DNA of 64,000 nt from Mizuhopecten yessoensis (lineage: Eukaryota), in assembly GCF_002113885.1 (NCBI RefSeq), contig NW_018480068.1:115565-179564 (forward strand), written 5' to 3'. Each line of letters starts with the position of its first letter. Position 1 is the first letter of the stretch. A program made the translations under genes and the position numbers. Positions 17,250 to 42,323 of this stretch are shown here, one piece after another. The notes beneath the pieces were generated by a model. The model did no database searches. It saw only the letters and a program-made list of their open reading frames with translations, and was not told the DNA's origin.

Positions 17250-17552
17250 TACCTTTCTAGCTTCATAAATAAGACAATTTAATCCGAATGACAACAACAC
17301 CCATGCTGTTGCGTCATGACATGAATAGATTATTAGGTTGACCAGTGGTCAGTCACCAGCGGCGGCAGTTAGACGGACTGAATGTTGCTCCATCCAACTT
17401 ACGAAGACACTACCATAGCAAATTTCTAGAACTTGGTTCACTTCATATTTTTGTGTCGCGCAATAGATATACACTCCGCGGGCTTTTCAAACGGAAAACT
17501 TTGTGTACTATAGAAGAAATTTTGACAGATCAGCTGTCCCATAAACCGCACC

Positions 17553-20500
17553 ATGCATCAAGTTAGTTTCGTTTTGGTGTTCTTTAACACGCTCTTGTTT
17601 TGCACGTGTGGACCAGGATTTGCTGACGTTGACAGAAGTAAATATGAGGATGGAAAATCCCGTTTTGAAGTCATTGATAGTCAGGCAAGGTTACCCAAAT
17701 ATGGGCAGTGTTGGCAGAGTGCTATAGCGGTCATTCAGAAAGGCTGCAAACAGCTGACACATATTGTACAAAACCGATTAGCTTTGGCCTATTTAAACTG
17801 TTTTCTTGAGGATCAAGGCCGCTTGACCTATCCATGCGACGTGGAAGAATCAATCTCATCCTGTACAAAACATATGTCTGATGTTGACCGAGGATCTTTT
17901 ACAACGTTTTTTACATACACCCAAAACATTTGTTATTTTCTAGAATCACAGATTTGGCATCAAGAAACAGAACAAACCATAACACGATTAGCTCACAGTT
18001 CTGAAAATGTGGCTGACCGTCTTGAGGAAAGTAGCAAATTACAAGAAGCTATGATTGGACAACAAAATTTAACTCTACAAAATCAGGAAATCATTCTAGA
18101 TAAAGCTGCAAATTTAAGTGACATAATATCAACATCATCGGATAACATGCATGAACTGTATACAGAATTTAAAAAATCTACAATTGAACAAAAGCTGTTA
18201 ATAAATGACATGTTTGATAAAGTCACCAAGCTTCAAACTATGGTGCTTGGAGAATTTTCAGGATTTTATTCCATGATATACTATACAGTTTCTGTGATAA
18301 TGTCCTACCTATTGACCTCATCACAAAGGACGGCAAGTGCTCGATTCTGGCTGTTTGGTATTTTAACCATTGGAATAATTGCTGAGAGGGCCATGGTTTC
18401 CATCCTCAATGGTGCATCATCATTTCACGTCGACATACCCATGGAGACGGATCTTGAAGTAAATTATTTTAAAGCTTGTTAAGAAATATCATGCATTTTG
18501 ATGAAATCAATTTTAGCTGATAAGCCTTGGTAAAAAGAAGAGATCCTTGGGTATAAACAGGTTGCTACTATAATGAAAAGAGTATTTGCAAATTGGGAAA
18601 AATTTATGTAACTATACAGTATAGATGGATGGTTAACCTGTTTTTTCATTTTTACCTTGCTGTGGTAAAATACTAGCTATTTCTTACTGACTCTGCTAAG
18701 TAGAATTTAGAATTTCTCTCCAGCTCATTTGGCAAATAGTAAAACTAGTAAACCAGATGTTCCGAGTTCAACTTCGAGTGGAGGCATTGAAAAAATGACC
18801 CCTGTTACATTGGCTCCCATGTAGGGACCAGAGAAATATTGACAACCCAGAATAAATACTTTCACAAGAATCGCTATATGACACTTAGAAAACTTTGAGT
18901 GAGTTTTTTTCCTGGAGGGGGAGACTATGTCGCCCTGGTAAAATACTTACACTTCTTACTGACTCGGGTAGGGATAATTCGTCTTTAGCTTAATTGATAG
19001 AGCATAAGACTAGTGAACTAGAGGGTCTGGGTTTGACTCCAGTTCCCTTTCTAAACATATCCCTGTTTAAATAGGCCAATGTTTAACCCAGATATTGTCT
19101 TAACTGACCCTGTCTACCCCAGATACTGTAAAAACTGCACCCTGTCTTGCCCAGATAACGTATATAAGTAAGCTTCATGCCTAATCCAGGTTCTGCATGA
19201 ATGTGTTATTGGACCATGTCACTAAGACAGATACAGTCTATCTAGTTGCCTCAAAATTAAAGTTCTAGAGCCAATAAAAGGCTGCTTCCTTTAGCACAAA
19301 ATTGCTCGTTTTCCTCAATTAAAGAAAAATTTGGGAATATTAACAATTTCTTATTTTGATAAAAAGCAATTGATGTAGGAACAGACTTGCAAAATCTAGG
19401 TAGAAAAAACACTGAAACAATCTGTACATTCCAATCTTTCCATTTTTTCAGCGCAATATTGCTTTGTATTGCAGTTAACACTTTTTTTTCTGAAAGAAAT
19501 TCAACTTATTAATTAATTGCATATTTTGCCATTCAAAGGTAGGAAAACATCAATACCTTGGTCACTGTATATACATTTGTAGTTACATTTCCGTAGCTAC
19601 AAAGTGAATATTGTCTTTCGCTTTTAACTGCGAGACTATTCACTAATATTAGTTTGTAATTTCCAATGTGTATGTCAACATGCATGATAGCCATTACTAT
19701 GTGAACTTACTGTAAATCTACTGTATTGTAATTGTTAAGTGCCATAGAACTTTTTTGGGGGAATTTTGTTGCCATTCCCGTTGAAATTAGGAGTAAAGTA
19801 GTTATCTCAAATTGTCTTCAAAATGTCCCAATGTAATTTAAACAAAACGGTTTGTTTTCAGTGGATTATACAACATTTAATATCTAGAATAAGACTATAC
19901 CTAAACTGTATATCACGATTACATCTGAATTTCTAAGACAATAATTTATTTATTTGAACAACCAAAAAATTTAGGGGTTAAAAATCAGATTTATTTTATT
20001 AACTCCCGATTTCAGACATCATCTGGTCAGTTCCAAAACCACGGCTCTATTACCAAAATAGTGGATACAAGCCCTGCACAGGGATTTTCCAACCAAACAT
20101 TTGGTCCCCTATTTACCAGTGAGTGGCAAGCTATCGTGATACATGTTATGTTACACCAGTCCTGTGGTAATATATATCAATACAGCCTCTCCGTGTTGTG
20201 ACACTCTAATGCTGTAACCCATGATTTGGTATTTGAAGGAGATGGTGTACACCAACCAGTGGCTTTGCAGAAAGGTATGCGGAGGTTTGGCATTGGTCAT
20301 CCTAGCCATATTTGCATACCGTTATCGTGACATCAACACCATCAACAATGAACTCCTCATGGACATAAAACGACAGAACTCGGAGCTCCGGCAATACCTC
20401 TTAAACACAACACCGACAGGTGAGTATACTGGTACCTTAACCCTTTCACCCCTATATAACTTTGGTAGACTTGGCCATGCATTGATATGGACGTGTCCAT

Positions 20501-23097
20501 TATGGTCTACAGTGGTGAAAGGGTTAAGATCACCGGTGGGGGGAGGAGGAATTCAGTCAATTTGTCTGTGTGAGTCTTATGAAGTCTAAACTGTGTTTCA
20601 TGTACACCAACCTAAGATGACTGTTTGACATCTTTAGTTAAACTCTGGGAACCAAAAGAAAATTTATTAACAAATTACTTGATTAATCATCCAACGCATG
20701 AATTTTAGTATGTACATTTGTACGACTGAACCAGTAAATCACAAAGAGTTTCGAAATTGCATTTTTATTTTATTTTAGCTAACAATGAGGTTTTCAGGAA
20801 AACTAATCGTGTAAGATTGTATAAGTATTAGTCAAAATATGGTATGAACTTATAGGTGATGTCAAAATATGGTATGAACTTATAGATGATGTCAAAATAT
20901 CTTCACTGAAAATCAGAAAGGTATCATGATTATCATATTTTGTATTGTATTAATTTGATAACTTGATAACCCAAATATTAAACAAATGTAGCATTTAATG
21001 ATTGTATTGTATTATTTCTTGTCATTCTAACAGACAGTCACATGTGTCCTGAAATACTAGTACATGTACTGTTGACCAATAGTTATGAAATAAGTGATTT
21101 TTATGCCCCACCGGGAATGTAGTCCTAAAGGGTTGGTATGTTGTATGTGTAATACTCACAGGGTATAGCTTATATTTACTCATCCCATTGTTGGTTTTGG
21201 GAGCTTCAGAAGAAAAGCAGGATAATCACTATGTATTACACATGTGTAATTATGTCTGTTCAGGTACCTTTGGATTAAAAAATCAGGAGTTTTCTAATTC
21301 CCAATCCAGCATGCTGACCTCCTCTTCTCCATTGGCAGTAGCTGCAGATTGTAAGTATGAATCTGGTGGTCATAGCAACAGTAAACTGCTCCAGTATTGT
21401 AATCAGTGGAAGTTATCATTACCTGTAAGTCACTGTGGAGGAATCAGAAATATACTAGTGGATTGGCTGATAGTCGAAAATAATCCTGAATCAAGATACA
21501 CCTAATTAATTCATTAGGAAAGTTTTACAACCTTTTCAAATCTTTTAGAATGATGCAGAATGGCATTTTCTTATGTTGAAATTACTTTAAACAAACATAA
21601 TTCCTAACCTTGATTAAAATAGTTAATTAAGAGGTAATTTACAACTCGGAGACTAGAAAGGGTTTTAGTGTCATTCAAAACAATATGTGTTCAGTATTTA
21701 ATTAAAAATTAGTAACCTCCAACAGAAAGAAGGGATATTATTTATCGAACCTTTTACACCGGAAATATTAAAGTAAATATGTGACAACTGTTGAAATTGT
21801 ATTGTTGATATGGTTATAGAGGCTTAAAGCCTGACTCCATTATAATGAGTTGTAATATATTTCTAATTTTAGCAACAGGATATGAAACTGATTCTGCTGT
21901 TAGTGACTGCAGCTACTTCACGGATACTGAATCTGTAACCACGGGAACAGACCACACCTTCCAGCCAGCACTGACCAACTGGGAGGACTCGGAGAATGAA
22001 ACCTGTTCTTCTGTCACGCCGTCGGATATTTCTCGGATTACTCAACAAGTGACTGATTTTGGAAAACCATGTTCTGACTTGCCCTTAAATATTGATACCT
22101 GGGCCAAAACTGGTTTCTACAGACATTCTACACCAATTGCAAGTAAGTTTTATTTCCCAGTCGAACTGCCAGAAGTTACATACAAATAAAGTTTAGTAAT
22201 AAAACTATGTCTACATCAGGTGTATGTCTAAAAAAAGACCAGGGCTATTTCAGAAGTAAATATTTGGGAAAGAGGCACAATTGTAGCCCCCACTACCCAC
22301 AATTGTGTTTTTCCTATGGCCCACAGTACAACATTTAAGATTTTAGACCATGTGATTAACCATGACAGCACTCAGGTGTGTGATCAGACAAGTCTTATTA
22401 CTTATAACGTCTGTTTCTTGTCATGCCGTGTTAAATTTAATATATAATAAAAAAATAAAAAAATAAAATGAGGGGGGGGGGGGGATAAGGATACAACATT
22501 TTTCTTTTCTATTGTGTATTTTGTATTTTAAATCTTGCACTCAACTTTTTTTTTTTCAGAAAATAATGGTTCCGATCTTGATTCGTCCATAGCAGAATCT
22601 GTCAAACAAAGGCGGAATAGATCACAGACACCAGAGCAAGTAAGTTCTCACACTGCAAGATCTTAGTGTTTTTCTTTCAAAGCATGCAGTACTTTTACTA
22701 ATACATGTACTAGTATTATAGATTTGAGACGTGTGCATATACAAAAGGTTGAAACGTGTAAATTGTTATCAATAAAACTCACAAATGAGACCCCAGAAGG
22801 ATATGTATTGACACGAATGAAATCATACATAAAATATTCTTTGGAATGTTTGAATTTCTTTTCCATTCTTTACAGTGTACCAGCGATACAACGCCAAGAT
22901 ACTGTTTTAGACCGAGAACTAGACGTTTAAACGACAATCCTGTCACAAGATCGGAGTCTCCAAGGACATTTTCACGTGTGGTCAAACAACTGGAACGGAT
23001 TGCAGTGACAAACAGCATGTTGGCCACCACTTACACCATCAAAAGGAAAAGTAATATCTCCGATGTGTCAGATTATGATGGCGGTGAACATCGGTGA
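17553..23097 (+). CDS. GEX1/Brambleberry/Kar5-family nuclear envelope fusion protein, paralogue A (about 581 aa, 6 exons)
   Basis: Exons 17553-18458, 20239-20419, 21264-21350, 21873-22142, 22560-22639, 22876-23097; GT-AG, phase-consistent, 1746 nt including stop. Architecture: signal peptide; six-Cys domain CW-x-GC-x-RLALAYLNCFL-x-GR-x-YPC-x-C-x-TQNICYFL, matching the GEX1/Kar5/Bmb cysteine-rich domain; helical coiled-coil region; three hydrophobic segments (FYSMIYYTVSVIMSYLL, FWLFGILTIGIIA, VCGGLALVILAIFAY); Ser/Thr/acidic tail. Confidence 0.88.
18690..19070 (+). repeat. Degenerate dimeric tRNA-like repeat
   Basis: Two tRNA-like heads (cagctcatttgg...gagttcaact and tagcttaattgatagagc...gggtttgactcc), each followed by ccctgtt(t)a. 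Confidence 0.55.
20437..20527. mobile_element. 91-bp TTAA-flanked MITE (piggyBac-like)
   Basis: ttaaccctttcacc...ggtgaaagggttaa, 18 bp downstream of the paralogue A exon 2 donor. Confidence 0.75.
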
Positions 23098-25552
23098 TTC
23101 TGTACTGCGACTGAAAAACTTACCTCTGTGTGGGGTCAGTGCTGCTCAATGTGATAGCTGGGTTTGAAAAATGTTGGAAGTAATGTCTAGGTGCATATAT
23201 TTTAACCTCTTTAATGCAACCAACTTTTTCTCTGAAAATTCCCAATACACCCATTGTATGTAACTAAATTGTGATAGGGAAATAAGTTCTTTGGAGGTTT
23301 ACCGAGAAATGGTTTCTTGTAAAAATGTAATATCAGCATGATCAAGTCTAGATTGTTTGTCTTGGGCTAAAACTTCTACAGTAGAGTTGTTGGTCATCTC
23401 GTCACAGACACAGCTCAATGACCTTGTGGTCACAGTTCTTGCCAATACTCAGGTGTGTCACCAGACATTTTCTTAATCTTTTATACAATATACAACATTC
23501 ATTAAAGTAACCACCTCTAATTGTGTTCAAAGAAATATCTTGATTACTAATTAATCATATACAACACATTATAATGCTTATCACATAATGGTGTATAAGA
23601 AAATACTAACATCTCCATATAAACAGATGACATAAATATTGAAATTAATTATATTTGATTGTAGAGTGTTCCATGTCAAGTGACAGCTTTCATTCCATAA
23701 AGCTGGTATTGAATACATGTCCAAATGTTTATTTACGTGTATACGGTATGTCTGTTCCATTGACTACACATTACCACTAAAGGATAAACAATGTGTGTAT
23801 TTACTTACAGTAGTGTGCTATATTCTAATAAATCAACAAACTACATATCTACCAGTATGGAGCCTGTATGAAATCCATGTCAGTGATTTTTCAGCCTAAA
23901 TTTTACAGCAGGCTGTTCCTACATGAATTGTGAAATATTTGGCATTATTTTTACTATAATTGGGAAATATTCCTGGGTTTTTTTCCTCACTTTGGGAATA
24001 TTAAGCACTTTTTAGCCAGGGGAAGCAGACTGTATTTGACTGTGAAACTAGGCAAACAAATCACTGCATGTTTGCATGTTTTTTAATTTTCTTTTCTTGT
24101 TTACATATTTTGGTGTGCTTCAAAATGTTATTGCTGTTTTTATCCTTAAACTTAACTGAAAGTGTTTTTATTTTTTAATCTTGATTTTACAGATTGCTGT
24201 ATCTACATAAATTTGGAAAGGTATTCCTGTTTTATTTTGTCAAGAACAGTGCTTCACCCTGTATTCGACTGTAAAACAAAATCATGATGTGATAATGTAA
24301 ATTACCTGTTTTATAATTTGATTGATTTTTCACAGCTTTTATAATTATAAGATGTGTGTGTGTGGGGGGGGGGNTGATCTGGGGGGGAAATCCTCATATT
24401 GTCAGGAAATGAATGTCGGATGACTGGATTATGGAGTTGGTATGTAATCGGGTTAAAAAAAACAAGGATCAATTGTTTTATTTTATTTGTTTTATTGTTA
24501 AATATAAAGAATATGTTTTTCCCCTCAATATGGAGATGATCTATTTTGAAATATATACAGCAACTCTTATTGACCAGCTGGACGTTAGTTTGACTAACAA
24601 TTATGAAGAAAGAATCCTTTATTTTCAACGATTTATGTGTTCAGGTATATTGATCAAGAAATGACCAAAATTTACTAACATGGTTTTGTTGTTAATGTTG
24701 TATTTTGTTTTGTGTTTAAAAAACATCTTTTTTAAGTAAGAAAAGGTTTTTATCATATTGACTATGTCGTGGATTTTGCATATTTTTATAGTTTTATGTT
24801 TGTCTCAATAGATATTTTAATAGTTTTATGTTTGTCTCAATAGATATTTTAAGGAAAACAAATCAGTGCTCATTAGGACTTGTATGCATAAATATTTGAA
24901 ATACAGATATGTTTAATTCAATTATTAATATGATATTTTAAGTTACTTTTTTGTAATCTGGTGAAATTACATTATTCTTGTATATCTTAAAACAGAAATG
25001 AATATTGTATTTAAATCAAATTTGCCATGATACCAAGTTTCATTGTCTATATTTTGAAGTTGAAATTTTAGGATTATCTGTGCTATTGTCTGTAGGCATT
25101 TTAACAGGAATTGACATTTAATGTCAGATTATTTATTGACATTTCATGATTATTTATTGTTATAACATTTAATTGATTTTCTTTTAAATTTTGGAGAATT
25201 TTATTGTGGTATTATGTATAAAATGAGTATACATGTATATGGAAAGTAAATAAAGACACTTTGATATTGATTTGACATGTTTATACATATTATATATACA
25301 TTTGTTTTAAGATTCTAACACAAGATGACCTTGGTACAAGGTGTTGAACGTTTTCCTTCCCCACTAGTACTCTTTACCCTTGACATAAACACTGCTACAG
25401 CAGTAAGTGCTGTTTGATACATGAAGTACATGTGAGGGAGAGATTAGATGTCTTTTAATTGATAAACATAATTGGCAAATCACCTTTACGATAAATTTGA
25501 CCTGGAAAGAAATGACATATCATCTCCTTATGCATAATTATAAATATGTCAC

Positions 25553-25815: not shown

Positions 25816-27675
25816 ATTAGCTCACCTGGCCAGGAAGACAAAGTTGAGCTGATGCCATACCTTGTCATCTGTGTGTCTGTCAGCAATTCCTTTAACTGAC
25901 TCCCTTGTTTGAACCACTGAATGGAATATTGCCAAATCTGTCTGGAGGAATCATCCTAATATGCAAGGGATTCAAAATTGTACGAATGGAGGAGGATAGA
26001 TTGGTGGGTCCAGAAAGAAGTAATTTGACCATGTTGCCTTAAAGAACTTCTCTTCTGTAACTATTGATTGAAGTTGGTAGGGAATAAACATTGTACAAAT
26101 TGAGCAACTGAACTCAAGAGGGGAGGACTAAAGGTTCAGTTTTTCCATATTGCTTTTATGTGACTTCACTAGAATTATGTGAGGTTATAACTTAAAAAGG
26201 AGATCCCACACTGGAACATATATATAATTGTTAAAGATAAAAATGAATACATTATATGCTACCAGGATTGATCTAGGGTCTAGCCCCACCCTGTTACACT
26301 CTATAAACATGTATCAACTGCTTGGTATGAAGAGATGACCAAATTCATGATATTAGATTCGACTCTTGACTAATATCCTGGGTCACAACTTAGAAACAGA
26401 TGAGATCTTCTCCGTATAACAATATATACATTTACTAAGTATAAAGAAACAAATACTCTCCCTATAACAATATATACATTTACTAAGTATAAAGAAACAA
26501 GTACTCTCCGTATAACAATATATACATTTACTAAGTATATGGAAACAAATACTCTCCCTATAACAATATATACATTTACTAAGTATATAGAAACAAGTAC
26601 TCTCCCTATAACAATATGTACATTTACTAAGTATAAAGAAACAAATACTCTCCCTATAACAATATACACATTTACTAAGTATAAAGAAACAAATACTCTC
26701 CCTATAACAATATACACATTTACTAAGTATAAAGAAACAAGTACTCTCCGTATAACAATATATACATTTACTAAGTATAAAGAAACAAGTACTCTCCGTA
26801 TAACAATATATACATTTACTAAGTATAAAGAAACAAGTACTCTCCGTATAACAATATATACATTTACTAAGTATAAAGAAACAAGTACTCTCCGTATAAC
26901 AATATATACATTTACTAAGTATAAAGAAACAAATACTCTCCCTATAACAATATACACATTTACTAAGTATAAAGAAACAAATACTCTTCCTGTAACCATC
27001 TACACATTTACTAAGTATAAAGAAACAAGTACTCTCCCTATACCAATATACACATTTACTAAGTATAAAGAAACAAGTACTCTCCGTATAACAATATATA
27101 CATTTACTAAGTATATAGAAACAAGTACTCTCCCTATAACAATATGTACATTTACTAAGTATAAAGAAACAAATACTCTTCCTGTAACAATCTACACATT
27201 TACTAAGTATAAAGAAACAAGTACTCTCCCTATAACAATATATACATTTACTAAGTATAAAGAAAAAAATGCTCATATGCTACCACATTTGCTCTGACGT
27301 GTTGGCCCACCCAGGGAGACTTGGATCCTGAGACATACTTTTGACAGAGATTTTCACCCCTAACCAGATATACAATTATTGCTGGTCATAAAGAGAAGAA
27401 TATAATCATGCTACAAGAATTGGCCTCTGGTTATGCATGAACCCTTAAACCTTAGGAACTTAGTCCTTTGGTCATAACAGTGAAACAGTTGCGATCACCA
27501 CCCTATAACAAATATAAAATTGCTGAGAATGAATATTTGGATACACATACTTTACCAAGATTGTTCTAAAGGCATAGCCTACTCCTGGGTCTTATTTGCA
27601 ATATCACTGTGGAAATATTTTCCTGCTATTGCTTAATATTAAGGAGAGCGATACAGACCCTCCAGGCCTCTTGTT
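25816..27675 (+). mobile_element. Degenerate HINE-like element enclosing the 48-bp array
   Basis: Starts ttagctcacctggcc...gagctgatgccat...tcatctgtgtgtctgtc; ends aggagagcgatacagaccctccaggcctcttgtt. Confidence 0.5.
26409..27267. repeat. 48-bp minisatellite, about 18 copies
   Basis: Unit tctccgtataacaatatatacatttactaagtataaagaaacaagtac; it produces spurious 16-aa-periodic ORFs in three frames. Confidence 0.96.
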
Positions 27676-28370
27676 TATTGATATCATTCCAATGCACCAC
27701 AAGGTAACCATATCTAGCTTTCTGACCTGAAAGCCACGGTTACGTCCCCTTAATACGCAGTAATCGCCAGAAAGTTACTGCTCACCTGATTTTTATGATT
27801 TTAAATATATTTGGCCTTGGAGGCGGATCGAAGTTGTTGTGTCACAGTATACCAAGTTGTATAGCCCTACATTACATATATAAACAGGGAACTATTAGGA
27901 GTCGTCTACATCCCCTAAACTTGTAGAAGTTAAATTATGTTTATTACATACATCACAGGTACTAGCCAATATTATACTTGGGTATCGCGTGACGTCACGA
28001 TTTACTGGGCCGCACACTGGACGGCAACTCGCGAGACTCGGCGACTCTGCGAGTTGAGAGTTCACAGTGAATCGAATGAGGCAATGACGACCATTAGCAG
28101 GTGTAAACAATCGACAAAAACAAGTAATTACCGCTCAAGTTTGGATAAAGAATCATCAGAAAGGTACACAGAGAGGCTTAAATTAATATTGACAGACGAG
28201 GCTAGTACCTGTGGTCATAGCGCTGCAAAAACGTAAAGCGTTGCTAAAATATTTGGGAATCATTGATCGATTGATAACCGTTGTTGTATTCAAACGAAAA
28301 GGGAACAATGTTCGAGTTTATACAACATCTAATGCTTGGAGCAGTATTTCATAAAATGCGACGAAATATT

Positions 28371-28900
28371 CATTTTACAACAGGTTGTGTGATTTCCCCA
28401 TCATTTTACAACAGGTGGTGTGATTTCCCCATCATTTTACGACAGGTTGTGTGATTTCCCCATCATTTTACCACAGGTTGTGTGATTTCCCCGTCATTTT
28501 ACGACAGGTTGTGTGATTTCCCCATCATTTTACTACAGGTTGTGTTATTTTCCCCATCATTTTACAACAGGTTGTGTGATTTCCCCATCATTTTACGACA
28601 GGTTGTGTAATTTTCCCATCATTTTACGACAGGTTGTGTGATTTCCCCATCATTTTCCAACAGGTTGTGTGATTTCCCCATCATTTTACAACAGGTTGTG
28701 TGATTTCCCCATCATTTTACGACAGGTTGTGTGATTTCCCCATCATTTAACAACAGGTTGTGTGATTTCCCCAACATTTTACCACAGGTTGTGTGATTTC
28801 CCCATCATTTTACAATATGTTGTGTGATTTCCCCCATCATTTTACAACAGATTGTGTGATTTCCCCATCATTTTACAACAGGTTGTGTGATTTCCCCATC
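28371..28900. repeat. 31-bp minisatellite, about 17 copies
   Basis: Unit catcattttacaacaggttgtgtgatttccc. Confidence 0.95.
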
Positions 28901-31800: not shown

Positions 31801-34800
31801 ATGCACAGCATGAACATTATGCTTGTGCTGAGTTTCAGTACTATCAGTTTATCATGGTGTGCGAATGTTTTTTTTAATTTAAACAAGAATAAATATGAAG
31901 AAGGTCGAAATCTGTACGAGATCATGAACAGCCATACCAAGCGTCCCATATACGGTCAGTGTTGGAAGGACACCCTAGTGAAAATCAAGACTGGCTGTCG
32001 GGACTTAACCGATGTTGTTCAAAGTCGTATGGCGTTATCATATCTTAACTGTTTTCTCAAGGTTAATGGGAGGACCGTTTACACGTGTGGTGTAGAAGAT
32101 CCTGTTCATGAGTGTACACAAGCCATGTCTGATACAGACATGAGTACATTTGCGACATTTTTTACTCAAACACATAACATTTGTTATTTTCTTGAAGCTC
32201 AAAATTGGCAGAATGAAGCAGAGCAGACGATATCAAAATTAGCAAAAAGTTCGGCAAACGTGGTTGAAATTTTGGAAGACAGCGCAATTCACCAACAAGC
32301 AATAATACACCGACAAAACCTCACTTTAGAAAATCAAGACATAATTTTATTGAAAGCGACCAATCTTAGTAATGTAATTTTAACAGCGTCTACAAATGTC
32401 TTCGATTTTTTTTCTGTATTGGAAAAGAGGACATTTGACCAGAAACTCTTGATAAATGACATTTTCGATAAGGTTGCAAAGTTGCAGACGACCGTCCTGG
32501 GAGGCTTTTCTCGATTTTACTCCTTGGTATATTACACCTTGTCTGTTATAGTGTCCTGTTTATTGACTTCTGCCAGCCGAACAGCGGGCGCAAGGTTCTG
32601 GCTGTTAGCTATAATGACAGTCAATATCATAGTCGAGAGGTTGTTTATATATTACTTCAGTGGATCTTTCTCTGTAAAGGAGGTCAATAAAATGACCGAG
32701 GCTGAAATTGAGGTGAGTATATCTTACCTTACCTTATGTACATTGTCAAATATTGCAACGATTGAAGCCCAAATCAATAAAGATTAATGATATTTTGCAT
32801 AGTTTCTGTTATCAACAAGCATACCTTATGGCATGGTGCGGCGTCCGTCGTCCGTCCGGCGTCAACTTTTTACTTTAAACAACTTCTTCTGAATATCAAA
32901 GTTAAACCAAAATACCAAGTTTGATCAAATGAATGACCTTGACCCACTTTCAAAGTCACGGGGGTCAAATGTCATAAAATCTTCAAACGACTTCTTCTCA
33001 ATACCCAAAAGGCCCAGGGTACTGATATTGGGCCTGTAGCATGCTGGGATGAAGTGTTACTAAGTTTGTTTAAATTAATGACCTTGACCCACTTTTAAGG
33101 ACATAGGGGTCAAATGTCTTAACATCTTCAAACAACTTCTTCTCAATAACCAAAAGGCACAGGGTACTGATATTGGGCCTGTAGCATGCTAGGATGAAGG
33201 GTTACCAAGTTTGATCAAATAAATGACCTGACCCACTTTCATGGTCACAGGGTTCAAATGTCTTAAAATCTTCAAACCACTTCTTCTCAATAACCAAAAG
33301 GCACAGGGTACTTATATTGGACCTGTAGCATGCTGGGATGAAGGGCTACGAAGTTTGTCCAATTGGATGACTTTGACCAACTTTCAAGGTCACAGAGGTC
33401 AAATGTCTTAAAATCTTCAAATGACATCTACTCAATAACCAAAAGACCAAGGGTACTGATATTGGGCCTGTAGCATGCTGGGATGAAGGACTACCAAGTT
33501 TGTCCAAGTTAATGACCTTGACCCACTTTCAAGGTCACATGGGTCAAATGTCTTAAAATCTTCAAACAACTTCTTTCAAATAACCAAAAGGCCCAGGGTA
33601 ATGATATTGGGCATGTAGCATGCTCGGATGAACGGATGACAAGTTTGTTCCTAAGAATGACCTTGACCCACTTTCAACTTAATGTCCTTGCTCACAACAT
33701 GGTCACAGGCGTCATACGTTTAAATCTTTTAATAGGTTCTTATGAATCAAACACTGATATTCTGCCTTTAGCTGTATTTTAGTCCACTTTTAAGATAACA
33801 AGTGTGAGATAAATACCAGGTGAGCGATGCAGGCCAGTTGGGCCTCTTGTTAATTTTTGTTGTTGTAAAAACTTAATGCTTTTCATACTATTAAAAATGA
33901 CACTTATCGCATTGCATTTTATTTTTGTTTACTGTCAAAAGGTTGTCCATTGCACGTGACTATTTTTCCATTCCGATATTTCACACCGGGTATCCCGATA
34001 CAACAAACACGGAGCAGACTCAAATCGGGAAAGTGAGCGGAAGTGTTTGGGAAATTAAGCTGAACAACGGTCTCTATTTCAATTTATTTTCTACTACTTT
34101 CAAGAATGGTCATTAGTGTACATACCTGTGAAATAAAGAATTGAAACGACGACATTGAAGGTATTCGATGCATCATGTTTTTATACTTTAACTTTAATGA
34201 GGTTTTCCTTTGAAACTACAAGACGAGTATTATGTGCGCTTTGGAACTATTTTACGTAGTAATGATTGGAGACACCTGTGAGTAATACCGTGTTGCCTTT
34301 TTGGATTGGTTGTAATTTTGATGCACAATAACCCACATATTCAGGTAAAGGTTGGGCATATCGTACGCGGATAAAACGGACACAATAAACAATTGTTATT
34401 ATTTGAATGCATGATTTTCGCGCAGGTGGTCTAAACAGAACTTAAAAAAACATTTTGCGCCCAAAAAACATTGTATTTCTATATTGTTAGTAACTTTCTT
34501 CAAACAAATTATCGGCTGAAACTCTGACTGTGCGTTCTTTGTGCCCAAAAATGACAACTCCTATCATAAAAACGCAGATTGTTTTTGCGAATTGTAGTTT
34601 CTGAAATCTGTGTTACTATTTTCAGTAGATGTCACCAAATCTTACTTACTGTGTAAAATAGTTAAGAGAGTACACACAACTATTTATAGGTAATACAATG
34701 GTAAAAAAAGAAAGAAAAATAAAGTGTCAAAATTAAATGAAGCACCAAATACCTTCAACAATGTCGTTTCAGCTGTAATTTTCACAGATATATCTACACC

Positions 34801-37800
34801 AATGAGTGGCCTTGACAGTAGTAAATAAACTGAAATATAAACCAATACCTTTAATTTTCCAAAAACTGTCATTAACTTGTTACAATATTGATAAATTTGA
34901 CTATGTGGAATTTGTACCTGATCTGGTTCAGTGTGCCGGAATACCTGGTGCGTATTTAAAGCGTGGCATCACGTTTCATAAACATCATAGTAAGAAAACG
35001 TCGGTGATATTATGATTGGTCTAATTTGTCAAAGTATAAATATATAAACGTTATTTTCAGATTTACACCTTAAACATGTATTTCATAAGTAAAATGTAAC
35101 GTCATAATATGCAAAAAGAATCATACTGTTGTTTGCTATTTATAAAGGATGGGTGTCTATAAGGCCCTTTTTTGGGCCCCGGTATATTCGGATTTTCACC
35201 TCCCTATTTTGTTCAAAGATGTCCTATTGTATAACAAGCGGAACAAGAGTCCTAGAGGGCCTGTATCGGTCACCTGAAATATGTTAAAAATTATTGGTAT
35301 GAAGTAAAGATATAGCACTCCATGGTAGGTGCTGTAAGTACATAAGAAATTCAGAAAGATCCATCCAGTACTTGAGATATAACGAGAACAAACTTCAAAC
35401 AGAGCCCCACCCTATGCCCCTAAGGGGGTCATACCCAACAAGTATACAAGAACCGAAGGATGCTCCAGACTAAATAAGGATAAAATCCCTTAATCCCGAT
35501 GGTCGAAGAAGGATTTAAACGGTTTTACCTCTATTCCTCCTATTGGGCCCCGCCCTTCTGCCCCCTGGGAGACCACATCCACTGCTTATACAAAATTGAG
35601 TCCCCTTGGCTCAAGGATGCTCCAGACTAAATTAGGATAAAATCCCTTAATCCCTATGGTAGAAGAAGGATTTTAAAGGTTTTACCTCTATTTCCCCTAT
35701 TGGGCCCCGCCTCTCTGCCTCAGGTGGGGGGGGGGGGACAAAATCCTGTCATTCCTACAGAAGAAGAAGAATTTTGAAGATTTTGCTATATTTCCCCTAT
35801 TGGGGCCCTCTTTTCTGTCCCCAGGGGGGGCACACTCGCTGTTTTTACGAAATTGAGTCCCTTTTGCCCAAAGATTATCCAGACTTAATTAGGATAATAT
35901 CCCTTAATATCTATGGTAGAAGAAGGATTATAAAAGTTTTACCTCTATTTCCCCTATTGGGCCCGCCTCTCTGCCTCAGGTCCCAGGGGGTTCCCCTTCA
36001 CCTACGGATCCTTCAGACCAAATGTGGAACAAATTCTTTCATTCCTACAGAAGAAGAAGGATTTTAAAGAATTTGCTATAATTCCCCTATTGGGCCCGCT
36101 CCTCAGCCCCAGGGGGGCCAGACCCACAATTTATACAACATTTGTTCCCCTTCCCCCAAGGATGCTTCTGACCAAATTTGGTCAAAATCTGCTCAGTCGT
36201 TCATGACTAGTAGTGTTTTAAAGGAAAAGTGGACTACGGACGCTGCTGTATGGCATAAGCTCAGGTGAGCTAAAAGAAAACTACGGTAAAACTTTTACCG
36301 AAAGTGGTATTCTTAGGGTACCAAAAGGGGTAGGGTAAATCACAAATATAGTTTCCTGTTTTCAAAATGATCTTAAAAACAAAAATAATACCATTTCTGT
36401 TTTTGAAAACATGTATAAATTAGACAAGCATATGTAAGAGAATGAAAAATGACAGGAATTCAATCGTCACCTAAAGATTGTTTATAAATAACGAAGGATT
36501 AAGACAGGGGGTTGTTTCAGGTAATTTCCAAATGAAAAAAGTTTTGATTTCTCAATAATTTCCTTTGTTATTAATATTTTGACTGGAAATTTACAACTTT
36601 ACTCATTTAAGTAGACTTACATAAATTCCATATTGACTACATACTTTCCTTCTGTTTCATACCGAGTTATGGCTTCTGGACACATATCAAACTTGGCTAT
36701 TTCAAATATCTCTCAATCTTAAGCAAATTAAAAGGTGCAGGACACCCTTTATATGCTATAAGTATAAGATATCAATTGTTAGTATTGTATATTACATATA
36801 TCATATAATATTTTCTCAACATCTGTGGCTGAAGTGAGTTCCAGGTCCTGATTTGTGTTTTTTACTTATCAAAGTTACCTTACAGATCAAAAATGGCATT
36901 TGCCATCACAACTACTGTGAAAATGATTGATTTAATATATGAAGTTTGATTTGCTTAGTTTTTCCGCTTGTCATATAATAGGACATTTTTGAACAAAATA
37001 GGGAGGTGAAAATTCGAATATACCGGGGCCCTAAAAAGGGCCTTATAGACACTCATCCTTTGCATTATTCGCTGAAATATATATATTTGCATGAAAATGA
37101 ATAATTTGTTATCAAGGAGACCGTTTACACATACCAATGGTTGTGTAGAGAGGTGAGCGCAATCCTGTCTATTGCTGTCCTCGTCTTCTACATATACATC
37201 TACAGAAACCTCAAAGTCATCAACAACCAGCTGCTGCTGAAACTGAAGAAACAAAACTCGGAGCTCAAACATCAAGTCAAGGAACTCTCTAAAGATATTT
37301 CTATAATTCGTCATTACATCATGAATCAACCAATCGCAGGTGGGTACTACGGGAACACGTTCTAGACGGTTGTGCAATAAGTGTTTATTTACATATTTGT
37401 ATTCAATTTAAATGTTCGGCATCTTGGAAGAGTAGAACCTAGCCTTATCAACTGTGAAATTTTAACTACATAATCAGGGACGGTTGGTATGTAAACAGGC
37501 ATATCAACTGTGAAATGTTATCTACATAATCTAATCAGGGATAATTGGTATGTAAACAGGCATATCAACTGTGAAGTGTTAACGACACAATCAGGGATGG
37601 TTGGTATGTAAACAGACATATCAACTGTGAAATTTTAACTACATAATCAGGAACGGTTGGTATGTAAACAGGCATATCAACTGTGAAATGTTATCTACAT
37701 ACTCAGAGATGGATGGGATGTAAACAGACATATCATCTGTGAAATATTAACTACATAATGTACATAATCAGGGACGGTTGGTATGTAAACAGACATATCA

Positions 37801-40800
37801 ACTGTGAAATGTTATCTACATAATCAGGGATGGTTGGTATGTAAACAGACATATCAACTGTGAAGTGTTAACGACACAATCAGGGATGGTTGGTATGTAA
37901 ACAGGCATATTAACTATGAAGTGTTAACTGCATAATCAGGGATGGTTGGTTTGTAAACAGGCATATCAACTGTGAAATATTAACTACATAATGTACATAA
38001 TCAGGGATGGTTGGTATGTAAACAGACATATCAACTGTGAAGTGTTAACGACACAATCAGGGATGTTTGGTATGTAAACGGGCATATCAACTGTGAAGTG
38101 TTAACGACATAATGTACATAATCAGGGATGGTTGGCATGTAAACAGACATATCAACTGTGAAGTGTTAACGACATAATGTATATAATCAGGGATAGTTGG
38201 TATGTAAACAGGCATATCAACTGTGAAAATATTATGACACAATCAGGGATGTTTGGTATGTAAACAGACATATCAATTGTGAAGTGTTAACGACACAATC
38301 AGGGATGGTTGGTATGTAAACAGGCATATCAACTGTGAAGTGTTATCTACATGAATGTACATAATCAGGGATGGTTGGTATGTAAACAGACATCAACTGT
38401 GAAATATTATCTACATAATGTACATAATCAGGGATGGTTGGTATGTAAACAGGAATATTATCTGTGAAATGTTCTCTACATAATCAGGGATGGTTGGTAT
38501 GTAAACGGGCATATCAACTGTGAAGTGTTAACGACACAATCAGGGATGGTTGGTATGTAAACAGACATATCATCTGTAAAAAAATATTAACTACATAATG
38601 TACATAATCAGGGATGGTTGGTATGTAAACAGGCATATTATCTGTGAAATGTTCTCTACATAATCAGGGATGGTTGGTATGTAAACAGACATATCAACTG
38701 TGAAATGTTATCTACATAATGTACATAATCAGTGATGGTTGGTATGTAAACAGACATATCAACTGTGAAGTGTTAACNCAGGGATGGTTGGTATGTAAAC
38801 AGGCATAGCATCTGTGAAGTGTTAACTACATAATATACATAATCAGGGATGGTTGGTATGTAAACAGACATATCATCTGTGAAGTGTTAACTACATAATG
38901 TACATAATCAGGGATGGTTGGTATGTAAACAGGCATAGCATCTGTGAAGTGTTAACTACATAATATACATAATCAGGGATGGTTGGTATGTAAACAGACA
39001 TATCATCTGTGAAGTGTTAACTACATAATGTACATAATCAGGGATGGTTGGTATGTAAACAGGCATATTAACTGTGAAGTGTTAAGGACATAATCAGGGA
39101 TGGTTGGTTTGTAAACAGGCATATCATCTGTGAAATATTAACTACATAATGTACATAATCAGGGATGGTTGGTATGTAAACAGGCATATCAACTGTGAAG
39201 TGTTAACGACACAATCAGGGATGGTTGGTATGTAAACAGGCATATCAACTGTGAAGTGTTAACGACATAATCAGGAATGGTTGGTATGTAAACAGACATA
39301 TCAACTGTGAAGTGTTTACGACATAATGTACATAATCAGGGATGGTTGGTATGTAAACAGGCATAGCATCTGTGAAATGTTATCTACACAATCAGTGATG
39401 GTTGGTATGAAAACAGGCATATCAACTGTGAAGTATGAACTACACAATCAGGGATGGTTGGTATGTAAACAGGCATATCAAATGTGAAGTGTTAACGACA
39501 CAATCAGGGATGGTTGGTATGTAAACAGGCATATCAATTGTGAAGTGTTAACTACATAATCAGGGATGGTTGGTATGTAAACAGACATATCATCTGTGAA
39601 ATGTTATCTACATAATCAAATCAGAGATGGTTGGTATGTAAACAGGCATATTATCTGTGAAGTGTTAACTACATAATCAGGGATGGTTGGTATGTAAACA
39701 GGCATATCAACTGTGAAATATTATGTGAAATATTAACTACATAATCAGTGATGGTTGGTATTTAACTAGTGTGGAAGGTCAACCATCGTCAAATTAAGTC
39801 CACTTTGTTACAGTCTGGTAGTGAACTGGCCATTACTATTGTATACAGATTAAGAAAAGGAGTCTGGATATCATTTCAAATTCTGGACGTAAAAGAAATG
39901 TATGTTTTACTTGAAATGATATTTTGATGAACAAATATCACATTTTCTTCTGTATATGCAATTAATCGATCTGTACTCCTATATATATACTCCTTTCTTT
40001 CAGTATTAACATATTTTATTGACATGAGGACAGTCGAAAGGATATAGGTAAACATAAGGCCAGTTTATTCTATCAATATTATCTCTCGATTCTTTCTAAG
40101 ATCGGAACACAAAATGTGTCTGAATCCTAAAGAAATTGTTCAGGGAGCCAAAACTTTTATCAAACTGCAATAAACGATATTGTGTACGATGCTAGACTGT
40201 TGTTGGTTATATACAAGACCCAGATTTGGCTTTGTCTATGCAAGATAATCGATGGTTATAAAGTTATTGAATTTTCGTTCTACCTAGACTGTTTTACTGT
40301 GAAATCGAATATTTTCATGGGGTCCAAATTTTGTGGTTTCCCGAAAAACACCATTTCGAGGGTGCATGCATTCGTGGATCACGTGTTCCGACTCATACGG
40401 AGTATGGCTTTGTTAAACTTCGATGCAGATTACCCACGAAATCAACGAAATTAAAAACCCCACGAAAAATAGTGATTTCAGTTATTATTAAAAAGTGAAG
40501 AAATAGCATATGGTTCTCATCAAGGTTTTATTTAAATGTGTATGTTTTAAGTTTAATTCATTTTGCGTATGCAAATGGTAAAGTTTCTTGAATCCGTTTA
40601 GTAAACTAAGCGAGTATGAAAATAGACATCTACACTGTATGTAGCATTTAACTAGTTCTATTTGACATTGGAATGGTTAAATTATACTTTTGAATGCTAC
40701 AGATTCTGACGATTCGGATGCTGAATCATCAAGTAAAATCCTTCCGGCACGAAGGAAACAGAAGAAGTCGATATCTCCTCTACAGGTAAATACGTGATCT

Positions 40801-42323
40801 CACAGTTGTTGAAGACAGAATGAAAATGCTGTTGAATTGATAAAATATGATAGAAATAAAAGTAATTATATTGAAAATTGTTTTCTGGTCGATCAATTTT
40901 CAATGCTTTTTATAGTCGAAGTGTTTTATTAGTTTAAGTATTTTTTTGAATATTGTGGCTCATGGTAAAGAAGGGCGAGTGTCTAACTAATATTAGACAT
41001 AATTATGTTTTCCTTGCACAATCGTTCATATTTGTCATATTTAGTTAGGTCTTTGTTCGTGGTTCACAGCAATGTGTTTGTTTGTTTATTCGTTAAATAT
41101 ATGTTACACCAAACGTTAACAGTTATGGATTTAACAAAAACTTGTTAGATATCCAGTTCAAATAAATAATAGAAGAATCAGAAACAACAAAACGTGAATG
41201 GTTGAAGAAGGTATATTGAATATTACGTTTGAAGTATGAAGGACCGGTGAAAACATAGAAATGATGTGTTACCAAAAGGCTACCAAAGAATTCGGGAATA
41301 AAAATGGAAGATTGTTATCATTACTATTGGAGAAAGCTGTAACATAGATGATAAATAATAACGTCAGTAAATCTTGAAATGTGTACCATTGATATGTAGG
41401 TTTTGCCAACGACGGCCAACGCCAACGAAACTAATATAGAGGCAGACGATCGGAGTGAAATCACTGTGGAAACTAGTGATCGGGAGCAAGCGGTAGCCAC
41501 TTCCGGTACAGAGACATCATCTACAAGTTCCGGTGCCGAAGGATCAGGAAGTAGGTCAGAGGGACTTGGAACTTCTCCAATTGCAAGGAGATCAATGACA
41601 ACGTCCGACACAGAGAGATCGGTATCCACTTCCGGTGCAGATATGACTCCCTTAGTAGACACGCCACAGGTAAATGTCTAGAATCATTCAAATTTAACTT
41701 TTACACATAGGAGGGTAAGCTGAAAATAATACAAAATTTAAACAATAGGTCAGAGTTGAAACAGGACTATTTTTTGGAGAGATACATGATTAATCCTAAA
41801 AAACGCTTTCTGTCTTGCACTATGATATGTTTTAACCAAGAGAACGTATTTACTTAGGGACACGCATCAAATAAAATAAAAAGTCGTTCCCAAGAAGTAT
41901 CCCCCGAAAACCAATCTTTACTCAGGAGTTTCCCATATACACAGTGAGACTACACCAAATCAACCCTGACACTATGAATGTTTAAAATCATGTGTTCATT
42001 AATTGTACATGATGGTCAAGTCATGTATCTTTAATGGTCAGAATCGTTTATGTGTAAATTTTAATTATTGATCAGAATCATTTATGTATTAATTGTAATT
42101 ATTGTCCATTATAATGTATGTGTTAATTGTTATTATTGATCAGAATAAATTAGGTGTTAATTGTAATTAACGGTCAGAATAGGTAGATGTTAATTGTCTT
42201 ATAATTTATCATTATCATGTTTGAGTTAAATGCAATTATCTGCATCATGGTATGTGTTGTTTGCAATTTCAGTCATCCGGGTATTCGCTAAGATCGATGA
42301 GTCGTCCGAGAACGCCACCGTGA
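31801..42323 (+). CDS. GEX1/Brambleberry/Kar5-family protein, paralogue B (about 510-525 aa); last exon uncertain
   Basis: Exons 31801-32712, 37117-37339, 40703-40785, 41400-41669, then probably 42273-42323 (SSGYSLRSMSRPRTPP*) or alternatively 41858-41947. Exons 1-2 are clearly homologous to paralogue A: all six Cys, RMALSYLNCFL, THNICYFLE, KLQTTVLG, LLTS..RTA.ARFWL, QWLCR, KQNSEL. Introns 1 and 2 have the same phases as in A. The start codon could be the ATG at 31801, 31810 or 31819. Confidence 0.82.
32815..33851 (+). mobile_element. HINE-like element with a 145-bp internal tandem array (about 5 copies)
   Basis: (cgtc)n microsatellite at 32841-32863; 145-bp units starting aatgaccttgacccactttcaaggtcac; terminus caggtgagcgatgcaggccagttgggcctcttgtt with a short palindrome. 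Confidence 0.8.
35145..37060. mobile_element. TIR element (about 100-bp TIRs, Kolobok-like by inference) carrying a nested HINE
   Basis: aaggatgggtgtctataaggcccttttttgggccccggtatattcg... versus ...cgaatataccggggccctaaaaagggccttatagacactcatcctt; a partial third copy is at 45960-46143. Confidence 0.8.
35242..36275 (-). mobile_element. HINE-like element nested in the TIR element
   Basis: aacaagagtcctagagggcctgtatcggtcacctga ... about 156-bp internal repeats ... gctcaggtgagctaaaa. Confidence 0.8.
37446..39765. repeat. 56/65-bp minisatellite, about 40 copies, in paralogue B intron 2
   Basis: Unit tatcaactgtgaagtgttaacgacacaatcagggatggttggtatgtaaacaggca, with an optional 9-bp atgtacata insertion. 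Confidence 0.96.
40295..40484. mobile_element. Tc1/mariner-type MITE (degenerate)
   Basis: tactgtgaaatc...ttttcatgggg / ccccacgaaaaatagtgatttcagtta inverted termini with TA ends. Confidence 0.55.

What the first reader, a model, noticed from the sequence alone, without database searches (positions are those of the whole stretch)
17553..23097. An animal nuclear-fusion protein that looks like plant GEX1 rather than vertebrate Brambleberry
Seen in sequence: signal peptide, six-Cys domain, coiled coil and three TM segments, then YRYRDINTINNELL directly after TM3, YLLTSSQRTASARFWLF between TM1 and TM2, and TTPRYCFRPR in the last exon. From my recollection, not a search, plant GEX1 proteins have three TMs, Y.LTS.K.T...R..L between TM1 and TM2, YRDYE.LN..ML after TM3 and a C-terminal RY(N)(L/F)RPR motif. 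Established: GEX1/Kar5/Bmb mediate karyogamy and karyomere fusion. Inference: this lineage retains a GEX1-type subfamily distinct from bmb, a candidate, apparently uncharacterised pronuclear or karyomere fusion factor. The whole luminal region and TM1-2 sit in one 906-nt exon.
Basis: partly seen in the sequence, partly recalled or inferred. Interest (0 to 1): 0.8.

Follow-up and report, generated by a model that had tools for sequence, protein, structure and literature searches.

The report
Scallop GEX1/zeat1-type nuclear-fusion gene
This is a real, expressed scallop gene for a nuclear-envelope fusion protein of the GEX1/Kar5/Brambleberry family; its fish counterpart is zeat1, not brambleberry, and that counterpart was shown in 2025 to be needed for fusing chromosome-containing mini-nuclei in early embryos, so the gene is genuine but not new in kind.

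Summary
Window 17553-23097 (+) is a spliced, transcribed gene of Mizuhopecten yessoensis. RNA contigs give six coding exons, one 87-nt exon more than a reading by eye, and a 581-aa protein. It has a signal peptide, a six-Cys domain, a coiled-coil hairpin, three hydrophobic segments and the quoted motifs.

- The gene belongs to an animal-wide family (945 phmmer hits) found in cnidarians, molluscs, arthropods, echinoderms, amphioxus, hagfish, shark, amphibians, reptiles and fish.
- The zebrafish member is LOC564674. I show this is zeat1 (Nat Commun 2025): the published gRNA matches its first exon, and both are 455 aa.
- zeat1 is a maternal-effect nuclear-envelope protein needed for karyomere fusion. 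That paper treats bmb as a separate, long-diverged homologue.
- So a type distinct from bmb exists. It is not special to this lineage, and its orthologue has been characterised in zebrafish.
- The quoted motifs are family-wide in animals, zeat1 included.
- Public records already auto-name relatives. A tandem paralogue 14 kb downstream is annotated "Protein GAMETE EXPRESSED 1".

I never obtained a plant GEX1 or true Bmb sequence, so the tree that would settle the subfamilies was not built. A third, very divergent family gene lies on another contig.

The parts
17300..17552 (+). 5' UTR (at least this much; the RNA contig runs beyond the stretch that was laid)
   Evidence: The X7 RNA contig is continuous from before 17300 into exon 1 (table 8).
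17553..18458 (+). Coding exon 1 (906 nt, aa 1-302): signal peptide, Cys-rich domain, coiled-coil hairpin, TM1, loop, TM2
   Evidence: ORF; GT donor at 18459; junction 18458>20239 in 3 contig runs and in raw reads; phmmer E 2.6e-167 to the Pecten orthologue.
17691..17957 (+). Cys-rich domain (aa about 47-135; Cys 53, 65, 83, 95, 104, 127)
   Evidence: Cys positions; invariant or at least 90% conserved in A1 and A2; pLDDT 93-97; matches a plant GEX1-like cluster at TM 0.47.
18258..18416 (+). TM1 (weakly hydrophobic), loop LLTSSQRTASAR, TM2
   Evidence: Hydropathy; helices ending at 254 and at 263-288 in the model; loop motif conserved from cnidarians to fish.
20239..20419 (+). Coding exon 2: luminal linker, TM3 (20260-20316), juxtamembrane YRYRDINTINNELL helix
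   Evidence: Junctions 18458>20239 and 20419>21264; hydropathy 1.88; helices 299-331 and 335-360 in the Pecten model.
21264..21350 (+). Coding exon 3 (87 nt, 29 aa, Ser-rich); missed when the region was read by eye
   Evidence: Junctions 20416(+3)>21261(+3) and 21350>21873 in RNA contigs X7 and X13; AG/GT and reading frame checked.
21873..22142 (+). Coding exon 4 (acidic, Ser/Thr-rich tail, predicted disordered)
   Evidence: Junctions; low pLDDT for the equivalent part of the Pecten model.
22560..22639 (+). Coding exon 5
   Evidence: Junctions 22142>22560 and 22639>22876 in 3 runs.
22876..23097 (+). Coding exon 6 with the RYCFRPR motif (22888-22917), a conserved C-terminal helix and the stop codon
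   Evidence: Junction; family consensus YNLRxR with Y, L and R at least 90% conserved; helix 529-562 at pLDDT about 94 in the Pecten model.
23098..23250 (+). 3' UTR (at least this much)
   Evidence: RNA contigs continue to the end of the laid stretch.
31801..42320 (+). Tandem paralogue (gene 2), fast-evolving, annotated in GenBank as 'Protein GAMETE EXPRESSED 1 [Mizuhopecten yessoensis]'
   Evidence: Own-genome search E 4e-97, 52% identity; P0025 is 100% identical; exon hits at 31924-32739, 37111-37338, 40735-40788, 41400-41669 and 42270-42320; long branch inside the pectinid clade.

Best explanation
Window 17553-23097 (+) is a functional six-exon gene of the Yesso scallop. It encodes a 581-aa membrane protein of the GEX1/Kar5/Brambleberry nuclear-fusion family, of the animal-wide type whose zebrafish member is zeat1 (LOC564674).

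Inferred topology:
- A cleaved signal peptide puts the N-terminal part in the ER lumen or perinuclear space. That part is the helical six-Cys domain (probably three disulfides) on an antiparallel coiled-coil hairpin.
- TM1 and TM2 form a hairpin with a short basic loop (LLTSxxRTxxAR).
- TM3 leads into a juxtamembrane helix (YRYRDxNxxNNxLL).
- A roughly 170-aa disordered acidic, Ser/Thr-rich tail follows.
- The conserved RYxLRxR motif and a terminal helix end the protein on the cytoplasmic or nucleoplasmic side.

Inferred function, by orthology to zeat1 and by family: the protein sits in the nuclear envelope of gametes, eggs and early blastomeres. There it promotes fusion of nuclear envelopes, meaning karyomere-karyomere fusion and possibly pronuclear fusion, through luminal CRD and coiled-coil interactions that couple or bridge membranes.

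Shown here: the gene structure, transcription and splicing, the architecture, and family membership by sequence and fold. Inferred: localisation, timing of expression, and the fusion role.
For: - Splicing and transcription.
- Joined frame: intact 581-aa frame (joined only in a local script), 78% identical end to end to Pecten maximus XP_033745388.
- Family size: 945 hits.
- Tree: topology follows the animal phylogeny, with deuterostome, lophotrochozoan and arthropod clades. Taxa were named.
- Similarity to zebrafish P0210: exon 1 aligns over 253 residues without a gap, 33% identity, E 1e-55.
- P0210 is zeat1: the gRNA from the Methods of PMC12006353 matches once, exactly, 75-94 nt into its CDS (0 matches expected by chance). 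The paper's supplement gives 455 aa and a 'GEX1/Brambleberry domain'.
- zeat1 function: maternal-effect mutants fail karyomere fusion and the protein localises to the nuclear envelope.
- Fold: the exon-1 model matches a Streptophyta 'GAMETE EXPRESSED 1-like' cluster at TM 0.47 over 167 residues and a Chordata cluster at TM 0.54. Unrelated rows score 0.31 or less.
- Language-model search: the nearest Pfam-bearing cluster is fungal Tht1/Kar5, score 0.88.
- Architecture: CRD, hairpin and TM domains as described for AtGEX1 and OsGEX1 in PMC9324357.
Against: - Pfam Tht1 (PF04163) does not match the protein or anything in the genome.
- No solved structure is related.
- No plant GEX1, yeast Kar5 or true Bmb sequence was compared directly.
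- The structural TM-scores to plant clusters are below 0.5.
- The tissue and stage of the RNA runs are coded, so germline or maternal expression is not shown. The one raw-read run gave only a handful of reads on the exons.
- TM1 is only weakly hydrophobic.
- Many molluscs do not fuse pronuclei before first mitosis (my own knowledge), so the relevant fusion event in the scallop is uncertain.
Confidence: 0.75

Rival explanations
1. The scallop gene is co-orthologous to both bmb and zeat1. Under this view bmb is only a fast-evolving vertebrate or fish-specific duplicate of the same ancestral animal gene, and there is no ancient 'GEX1-type versus Bmb-type' split in animals.
For: - The top 150 representatives form one species-tree-like family.
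- UniProt's automatic names mix 'Protein brambleberry' and 'Protein GAMETE EXPRESSED 1' within this one family.
- PMC12006353 sampled only fish when it placed bmb and zeat1 in two clades.
Against: - bmb-type proteins do not appear among the 150 best representatives or the 120 best hits of herring zeat1, so bmb is much more distant than any animal zeat1-type protein.
- The scallop has a third, very divergent family gene on another contig. It could be the bmb-type counterpart.
Confidence: 0.3
2. The protein keeps the family fold but in molluscs does a different ER or nuclear-envelope job, for example membrane shaping or tethering in somatic cells, and is not a nuclear-fusion factor.
For: - Spliced transcripts occur in several RNA studies whose tissues are unknown.
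- The gene has been duplicated, and one copy evolves about ten times faster, which shows some functional freedom.
Against: - Every tested family member acts in nuclear fusion: Kar5, GEX1 in Arabidopsis, Chlamydomonas and Plasmodium, Bmb and zeat1.
- All six Cys and the membrane-proximal motifs are strictly conserved.
Confidence: 0.1
3. The locus is a decaying or non-functional copy, and the annotated tandem neighbour is the working gene.
For: Only the neighbour appeared under a name in the first protein search.
Against: - The window gene has an intact frame across six spliced exons.
- It has a very short branch and 78-84% identity to Pecten.
- The neighbour is the long-branch copy.
- The first search could not see proteins longer than 528 aa, which explains why the 581-aa product was missing.
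Confidence: 0.02

Closest known systems
Zebrafish zeat1 (LOC564674, XP_693095, 455 aa; PMC12006353, Nat Commun 2025)
   Same: - Same animal-wide family.
- Gapless 253-residue alignment over the CRD, coiled coil and TM1-TM2 (33% identity, E 1e-55).
- Same LLTSxxRTxxAR loop.
- The RY(N/S)LRxR tail motif is present in a fish zeat1-type protein (herring P0125).
   Different: - The scallop protein is longer (581 aa), with a longer disordered tail.
- Its whole luminal part plus TM1-2 lies in one exon.
- The zebrafish N-terminus and TM1 fall below my hydropathy threshold.
- Function is demonstrated only in zebrafish.
Plant GEX1 (Arabidopsis Q681K7; PMC7586128, PMC9324357)
   Same: - Signal peptide, six-Cys CRD, coiled-coil hairpin and three TM segments.
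- The exon-1 model matches a Streptophyta 'GAMETE EXPRESSED 1-like' cluster (TM 0.47, 167 residues, rmsd 3.5).
- Depositors named the tandem paralogue and a sea-cucumber homologue after GEX1.
   Different:
Zebrafish Brambleberry (bmb, NP_001257483.1; Abrams et al. 2012)
   Same: - Same superfamily and the same kind of phenotype, failure of karyomere fusion with maternal effect.
- Called 'the only homolog of zeat1'.
   Different: - A separate gene: bmb maps to chromosome 25 (PMC7179931), and the paper places it in a separate fish clade.
- Described with two TM domains.
- Too distant to appear in my hit lists.
- The sequence was not obtained.
Fungal Kar5 / Tht1 (Pfam PF04163)
   Same: - Signal peptide, six conserved Cys, coiled coils and C-terminal TM segments (PMC4291462).
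- A Tht1 cluster is the nearest Pfam-bearing cluster in the language-model search (0.88).
- 21% of members of the matching plant structure cluster carry Tht1.
   Different: - The Pfam Tht1 model does not match at E<=1.
- Kar5 has two TM domains and no RYxLRxR tail described.

Membership tests
GEX1/Kar5/Brambleberry nuclear-fusion family | N-terminal signal peptide | tested here: met
   Hydrophobic stretch at residues 6-24 (KD 1.75) and helix 2-18 in the model. No dedicated signal-peptide predictor was available.
GEX1/Kar5/Brambleberry nuclear-fusion family | Cys-rich domain with six conserved cysteines (Ning 2013, as cited in PMC4291462 and PMC7586128) | tested here: met
   C53, C65, C83, C95, C104 and C127. 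All are invariant or at least 90% conserved in 91- and 74-sequence alignments.
GEX1/Kar5/Brambleberry nuclear-fusion family | Coiled-coil region after the CRD, forming a hairpin in the AtGEX1 and OsGEX1 models | tested here: met
   Helix 110-254 in the exon-1 model; hairpin H110-195 and H199-254 in the Pecten orthologue. Coiled-coil propensity was not scored separately.
GEX1/Kar5/Brambleberry nuclear-fusion family | [quoted passage not shown] | tested here: met
   Three hydrophobic helices at about 236-255 (weak), 267-285 and 310-328.
GEX1/Kar5/Brambleberry nuclear-fusion family | Profile or sequence homology to a named member | tested here: inconclusive
   - Pfam Tht1 gives no hit.
- Homology to zebrafish zeat1 is strong (E 1e-55), and the paper reports a GEX1/Brambleberry InterPro domain in zeat1.
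- The fold matches a plant GEX1-like cluster at TM 0.47.
- No direct alignment to AtGEX1, Kar5 or Bmb was possible.
GEX1/Kar5/Brambleberry nuclear-fusion family | Nuclear-envelope localisation and a requirement for nuclear or karyomere fusion | not testable with these tools
   Known only for Kar5, GEX1, Bmb and zeat1 from the literature.
GEX1/Kar5/Brambleberry nuclear-fusion family | Expression in the reproductive phase (gametes, or maternal product) | tested here: inconclusive
   Spliced mRNA contigs occur in three studies, but the samples are coded and no tissue or stage is given.
zeat1 / animal GEX1-type subfamily, as opposed to bmb | Groups with zeat1 orthologues rather than with bmb | tested here: inconclusive
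   zeat1-type proteins are among the best hits, and the tree follows the species phylogeny. bmb-type proteins never appear. No bmb sequence was available, so the contrast was not tested in a tree.
zeat1 / animal GEX1-type subfamily, as opposed to bmb | Motifs LLTSxxRTxxAR (TM1-TM2 loop), YxDxNxxNxxLL (after TM3) and RYxLRxR (tail) | tested here: met
   Present in the window gene and in the family consensus.

The most novel reading that the evidence does not exclude
Animals may ancestrally carry two deeply diverged members of this family that act together.

- One is the GEX1/zeat1 type, represented by this gene.
- The other is a divergent type. In the scallop it is the intron-rich gene on contig C5506. 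That gene has a signal peptide, a CRD with Cys spacings x17, x11, x8, x22 identical to the family's from the second Cys on, coiled coils and TM helices. In fish the counterpart may be bmb.

This would explain why maternal loss of either bmb or zeat1 alone blocks karyomere fusion in zebrafish. It would also predict a heteromeric fusion machine conserved from molluscs to fish. Scallops would additionally hold a rapidly evolving tandem copy of the zeat1 type, possibly specific to one sex or gamete.
Probability: 0.3. Interest if true: 0.6.

Novelty: new member of a known kind. Interest (0 to 1): 0.35.

Why it matters
Karyomere and pronuclear envelope fusion in animal embryos is understood through only two zebrafish genes, bmb and zeat1.

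This work shows that the zeat1 type is the widespread animal counterpart of GEX1, present from cnidarians to reptiles. Broadcast-spawning invertebrates with accessible eggs carry it, which makes the mechanism testable outside fish.

It also corrects database naming. Automatic names apply 'brambleberry' to proteins that are zeat1 orthologues.

For the scallop itself the gene is an ordinary, conserved reproductive gene. The tandem fast-evolving copy and the third divergent paralogue are the parts that add something.

Tried and rejected
- Pfam on all exon ORFs gave no hit at E<=1. PF04163 against the whole genome gave only noise.
- PDB by sequence and by Foldseek gave nothing related.
- I first took zebrafish P0210 for bmb because UniRef names it 'Protein brambleberry'. 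I rejected this after the cluster look-up (XP_693095, LOC564674), the bmb map position on chromosome 25 and the zeat1 gRNA match.
- I tried to reach plant GEX1 and Bmb with my last word-indexed search. It used the 965-aa Artemia fusion protein so that the length filter would exclude the many 450-530-aa animal proteins. It came back blank.
- Abrams 2012 and Ning 2013 are not held in the paper library.
- The Atlas feature search on a 62-aa exon of the third gene was uninformative, and Pfam on its exons gave nothing.
- Rfam on the very high-depth spot in intron 2 gave nothing.
- My first five-exon model, made by eye, was replaced by the six-exon RNA-supported model.
- The joined protein was handled only in local scripts. 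No database search or fold was run on it. Searches and folds used exon 1 by reference, and the Pecten orthologue served as the full-length proxy.


Full report
**What is there**

I laid contigs of three RNA runs from three studies, plus one raw-read run, on 17300-23250. They show five GT..AG junctions:
- 18458>20239
- 20419>21264 (reported as 20416>21261, cut +3)
- 21350>21873
- 22142>22560
- 22639>22876

One 1892-nt contig (X13) and one 2554-nt contig (X7) carry all six exons in order. The 87-nt exon 21264-21350 is not visible by eye. With it the CDS is 1746 nt and the protein 581 aa, with an intact frame and AG/GT at every boundary. Joined only inside a local script, the product is 78% identical from residue 1 to 580 with Pecten maximus XP_033745388 (573 aa).

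**Which organism**

The genome is Mizuhopecten yessoensis or something indistinguishable from it. The GenBank protein 'Protein GAMETE EXPRESSED 1 [Mizuhopecten yessoensis]' (P0025) is 100% identical to a second gene in this same window.

**Architecture**

- Residues 6-24 are hydrophobic, consistent with a signal peptide.
- Six cysteines (53, 65, 83, 95, 104, 127) follow. In 91- and 74-sequence family alignments they are invariant or at least 90% conserved.
- AlphaFold2 on exon 1 with that alignment gives pLDDT 87, a compact helical Cys-rich domain (pLDDT 93-97) and a very long helix.
- The full-length Pecten orthologue resolves the long helix into an antiparallel hairpin, 110-195 and 199-254. 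Next come TM2 (258-292), TM3 (299-331) and a juxtamembrane helix (335-360). A disordered tail of about 160 residues follows. A confident terminal helix (529-562) sits just after the RYxLRxR motif.
- This is the layout described for AtGEX1 and OsGEX1 models in PMC9324357.
- TM1 is only weakly hydrophobic in all members. That may be why some members are described with two TM domains.

**The family**

Pfam finds nothing. phmmer of exon 1 against 1.8 billion representatives finds 945 proteins at E<1e-3 and 149 at E<1e-30.

A FastTree tree of the best hits resolves into deuterostome, lophotrochozoan and arthropod clades, as expected for one orthologous animal family. Cluster look-ups name these members:
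- Nematostella
- Lingula
- molluscs
- Strigamia, a spider, Artemia and a collembolan
- a tardigrade
- a sea cucumber
- Ptychodera
- amphioxus
- hagfish
- a shark
- frogs
- a turtle and lizards
- many fish

The loop motif is present in the zebrafish protein.

**Is the fish member bmb? It is not.**

- UniRef calls zebrafish P0210 'Protein brambleberry'. Its record, however, is XP_693095, 'uncharacterized protein LOC564674'.
- bmb maps to chromosome 25 (PMC7179931).
- PMC12006353 (Nat Commun 2025) describes zeat1. It is a maternal-effect gene whose product localises to the nuclear envelope and whose loss blocks karyomere fusion. [quoted passage not shown]
- Its supplement gives a 455-aa protein with a GEX1/Brambleberry domain, a first-exon gRNA, and bmb (NP_001257483.1) in a separate fish clade.
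- The published 20-nt gRNA target occurs exactly once in the fetched LOC564674 locus, 75-94 nt into the CDS, with 0 matches expected by chance.

So LOC564674 is zeat1. Scallop exon 1 aligns to it over 253 residues without a gap (33% identity, E 1e-55).

**Link to GEX1 and Kar5**

- The exon-1 model searched against ESM Atlas structures hits a Chordata cluster (TM 0.54). It then hits a Streptophyta cluster named 'protein GAMETE EXPRESSED 1-like', of which 21% of members carry Pfam Tht1 (TM 0.47, 167 residues). A second Streptophyta cluster scores 0.45. Unrelated rows score 0.31 or less.
- The language-model search puts a fungal Tht1 cluster as the nearest Pfam-bearing neighbour (0.88).
- No PDB relative exists.
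- I could not obtain a plant GEX1, Kar5 or Bmb sequence by reference. My last protein search, designed to get past the length filter, came back blank.

**Other family genes in this genome**

Exon 1 finds exactly two loci, both in this window. The second (31801-42320) is the annotated 'GAMETE EXPRESSED 1'. It sits inside the pectinid clade on a branch about ten times longer than that of gene 1, yet keeps all six Cys and the loop motif.

A family profile also picks up a weak hit on contig C5506 (E 0.017). Inspection shows colinear minus-strand exons:
- a signal peptide with the first Cys
- two CRD exons whose Cys spacings (x17, x11, x8, x22) equal those of the family from the second Cys on
- two coiled-coil ORFs
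- an ORF with three hydrophobic helices

This is a third, very divergent member with an intron-split CRD. It is a candidate counterpart of bmb, but I could not identify it further.

**Verdict**

- A GEX1-like type distinct from bmb exists, and this gene belongs to it.
- The type is pan-metazoan rather than a lineage-specific retention.
- Its zebrafish orthologue was functionally characterised in 2025.
- Public records already label relatives, including the neighbour, as GEX1.
- The motifs mark the animal family as a whole.

The most likely function is nuclear-envelope fusion in eggs and early embryos. This rests on orthology, not on any demonstration in the scallop.

Noticed in passing
window 31801-42320 (+): This is a tandem paralogue of the finding's gene, annotated in GenBank as 'Protein GAMETE EXPRESSED 1'. 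The annotated protein starts at an internal Met (31924). The open frame upstream encodes a plausible signal peptide (MNIMLVLSFSTISLSWC...), so the public model looks N-terminally truncated. Exon 1 sits on a branch about ten times longer than that of gene 1. The C-terminal motif is degenerate (GYSLRSMSRPR).
   Followed up: partly
G000:C5506:1051666-1061297 (-) (loci L006, L009): This is a third, very divergent GEX1/Kar5/Bmb-family gene with an intron-split Cys-rich domain. The Cys spacings x17, x11, x8, x22 are identical to the family's. It also has a signal peptide, two coiled-coil exons and an exon with three hydrophobic helices. It is a candidate bmb-type counterpart. The exon boundaries were set by eye and have no RNA support.
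   Followed up: partly
window 20484-20682, core about 20495-20528 (intron 2): A core of about 35 nt reaches word depth near 100,000 in all three contig runs and about 70-80 in each read direction in the raw reads. Loose ends lie on both sides and many different flanks occur. This points to a short piece shared with very abundant or very numerous transcripts, probably a dispersed repeat. Rfam gave no hit.
   Followed up: partly
window 26409-27265, 28370-28900, 32913-33677, 37446-39724: Minisatellites lie between the two paralogues and inside introns of gene 2: 48 bp x18, 31 bp x17, 145 bp x5 and 56/121 bp x38.
   Followed up: no
window 21707-21872: In run X1 the contig that carries exons 4-6 begins inside intron 3 (21707) instead of showing the 21350>21873 junction. 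This may be intron retention or an alternative start in that sample.
   Followed up: no
L005 (Danio rerio CM111186.1:9170006-9208081): Zebrafish zeat1 (LOC564674) carries the UniProt automatic name 'Protein brambleberry', and many fish zeat1 orthologues are named brambleberry or brambleberry-like. These names mislead, because bmb is a different gene.
   Followed up: yes
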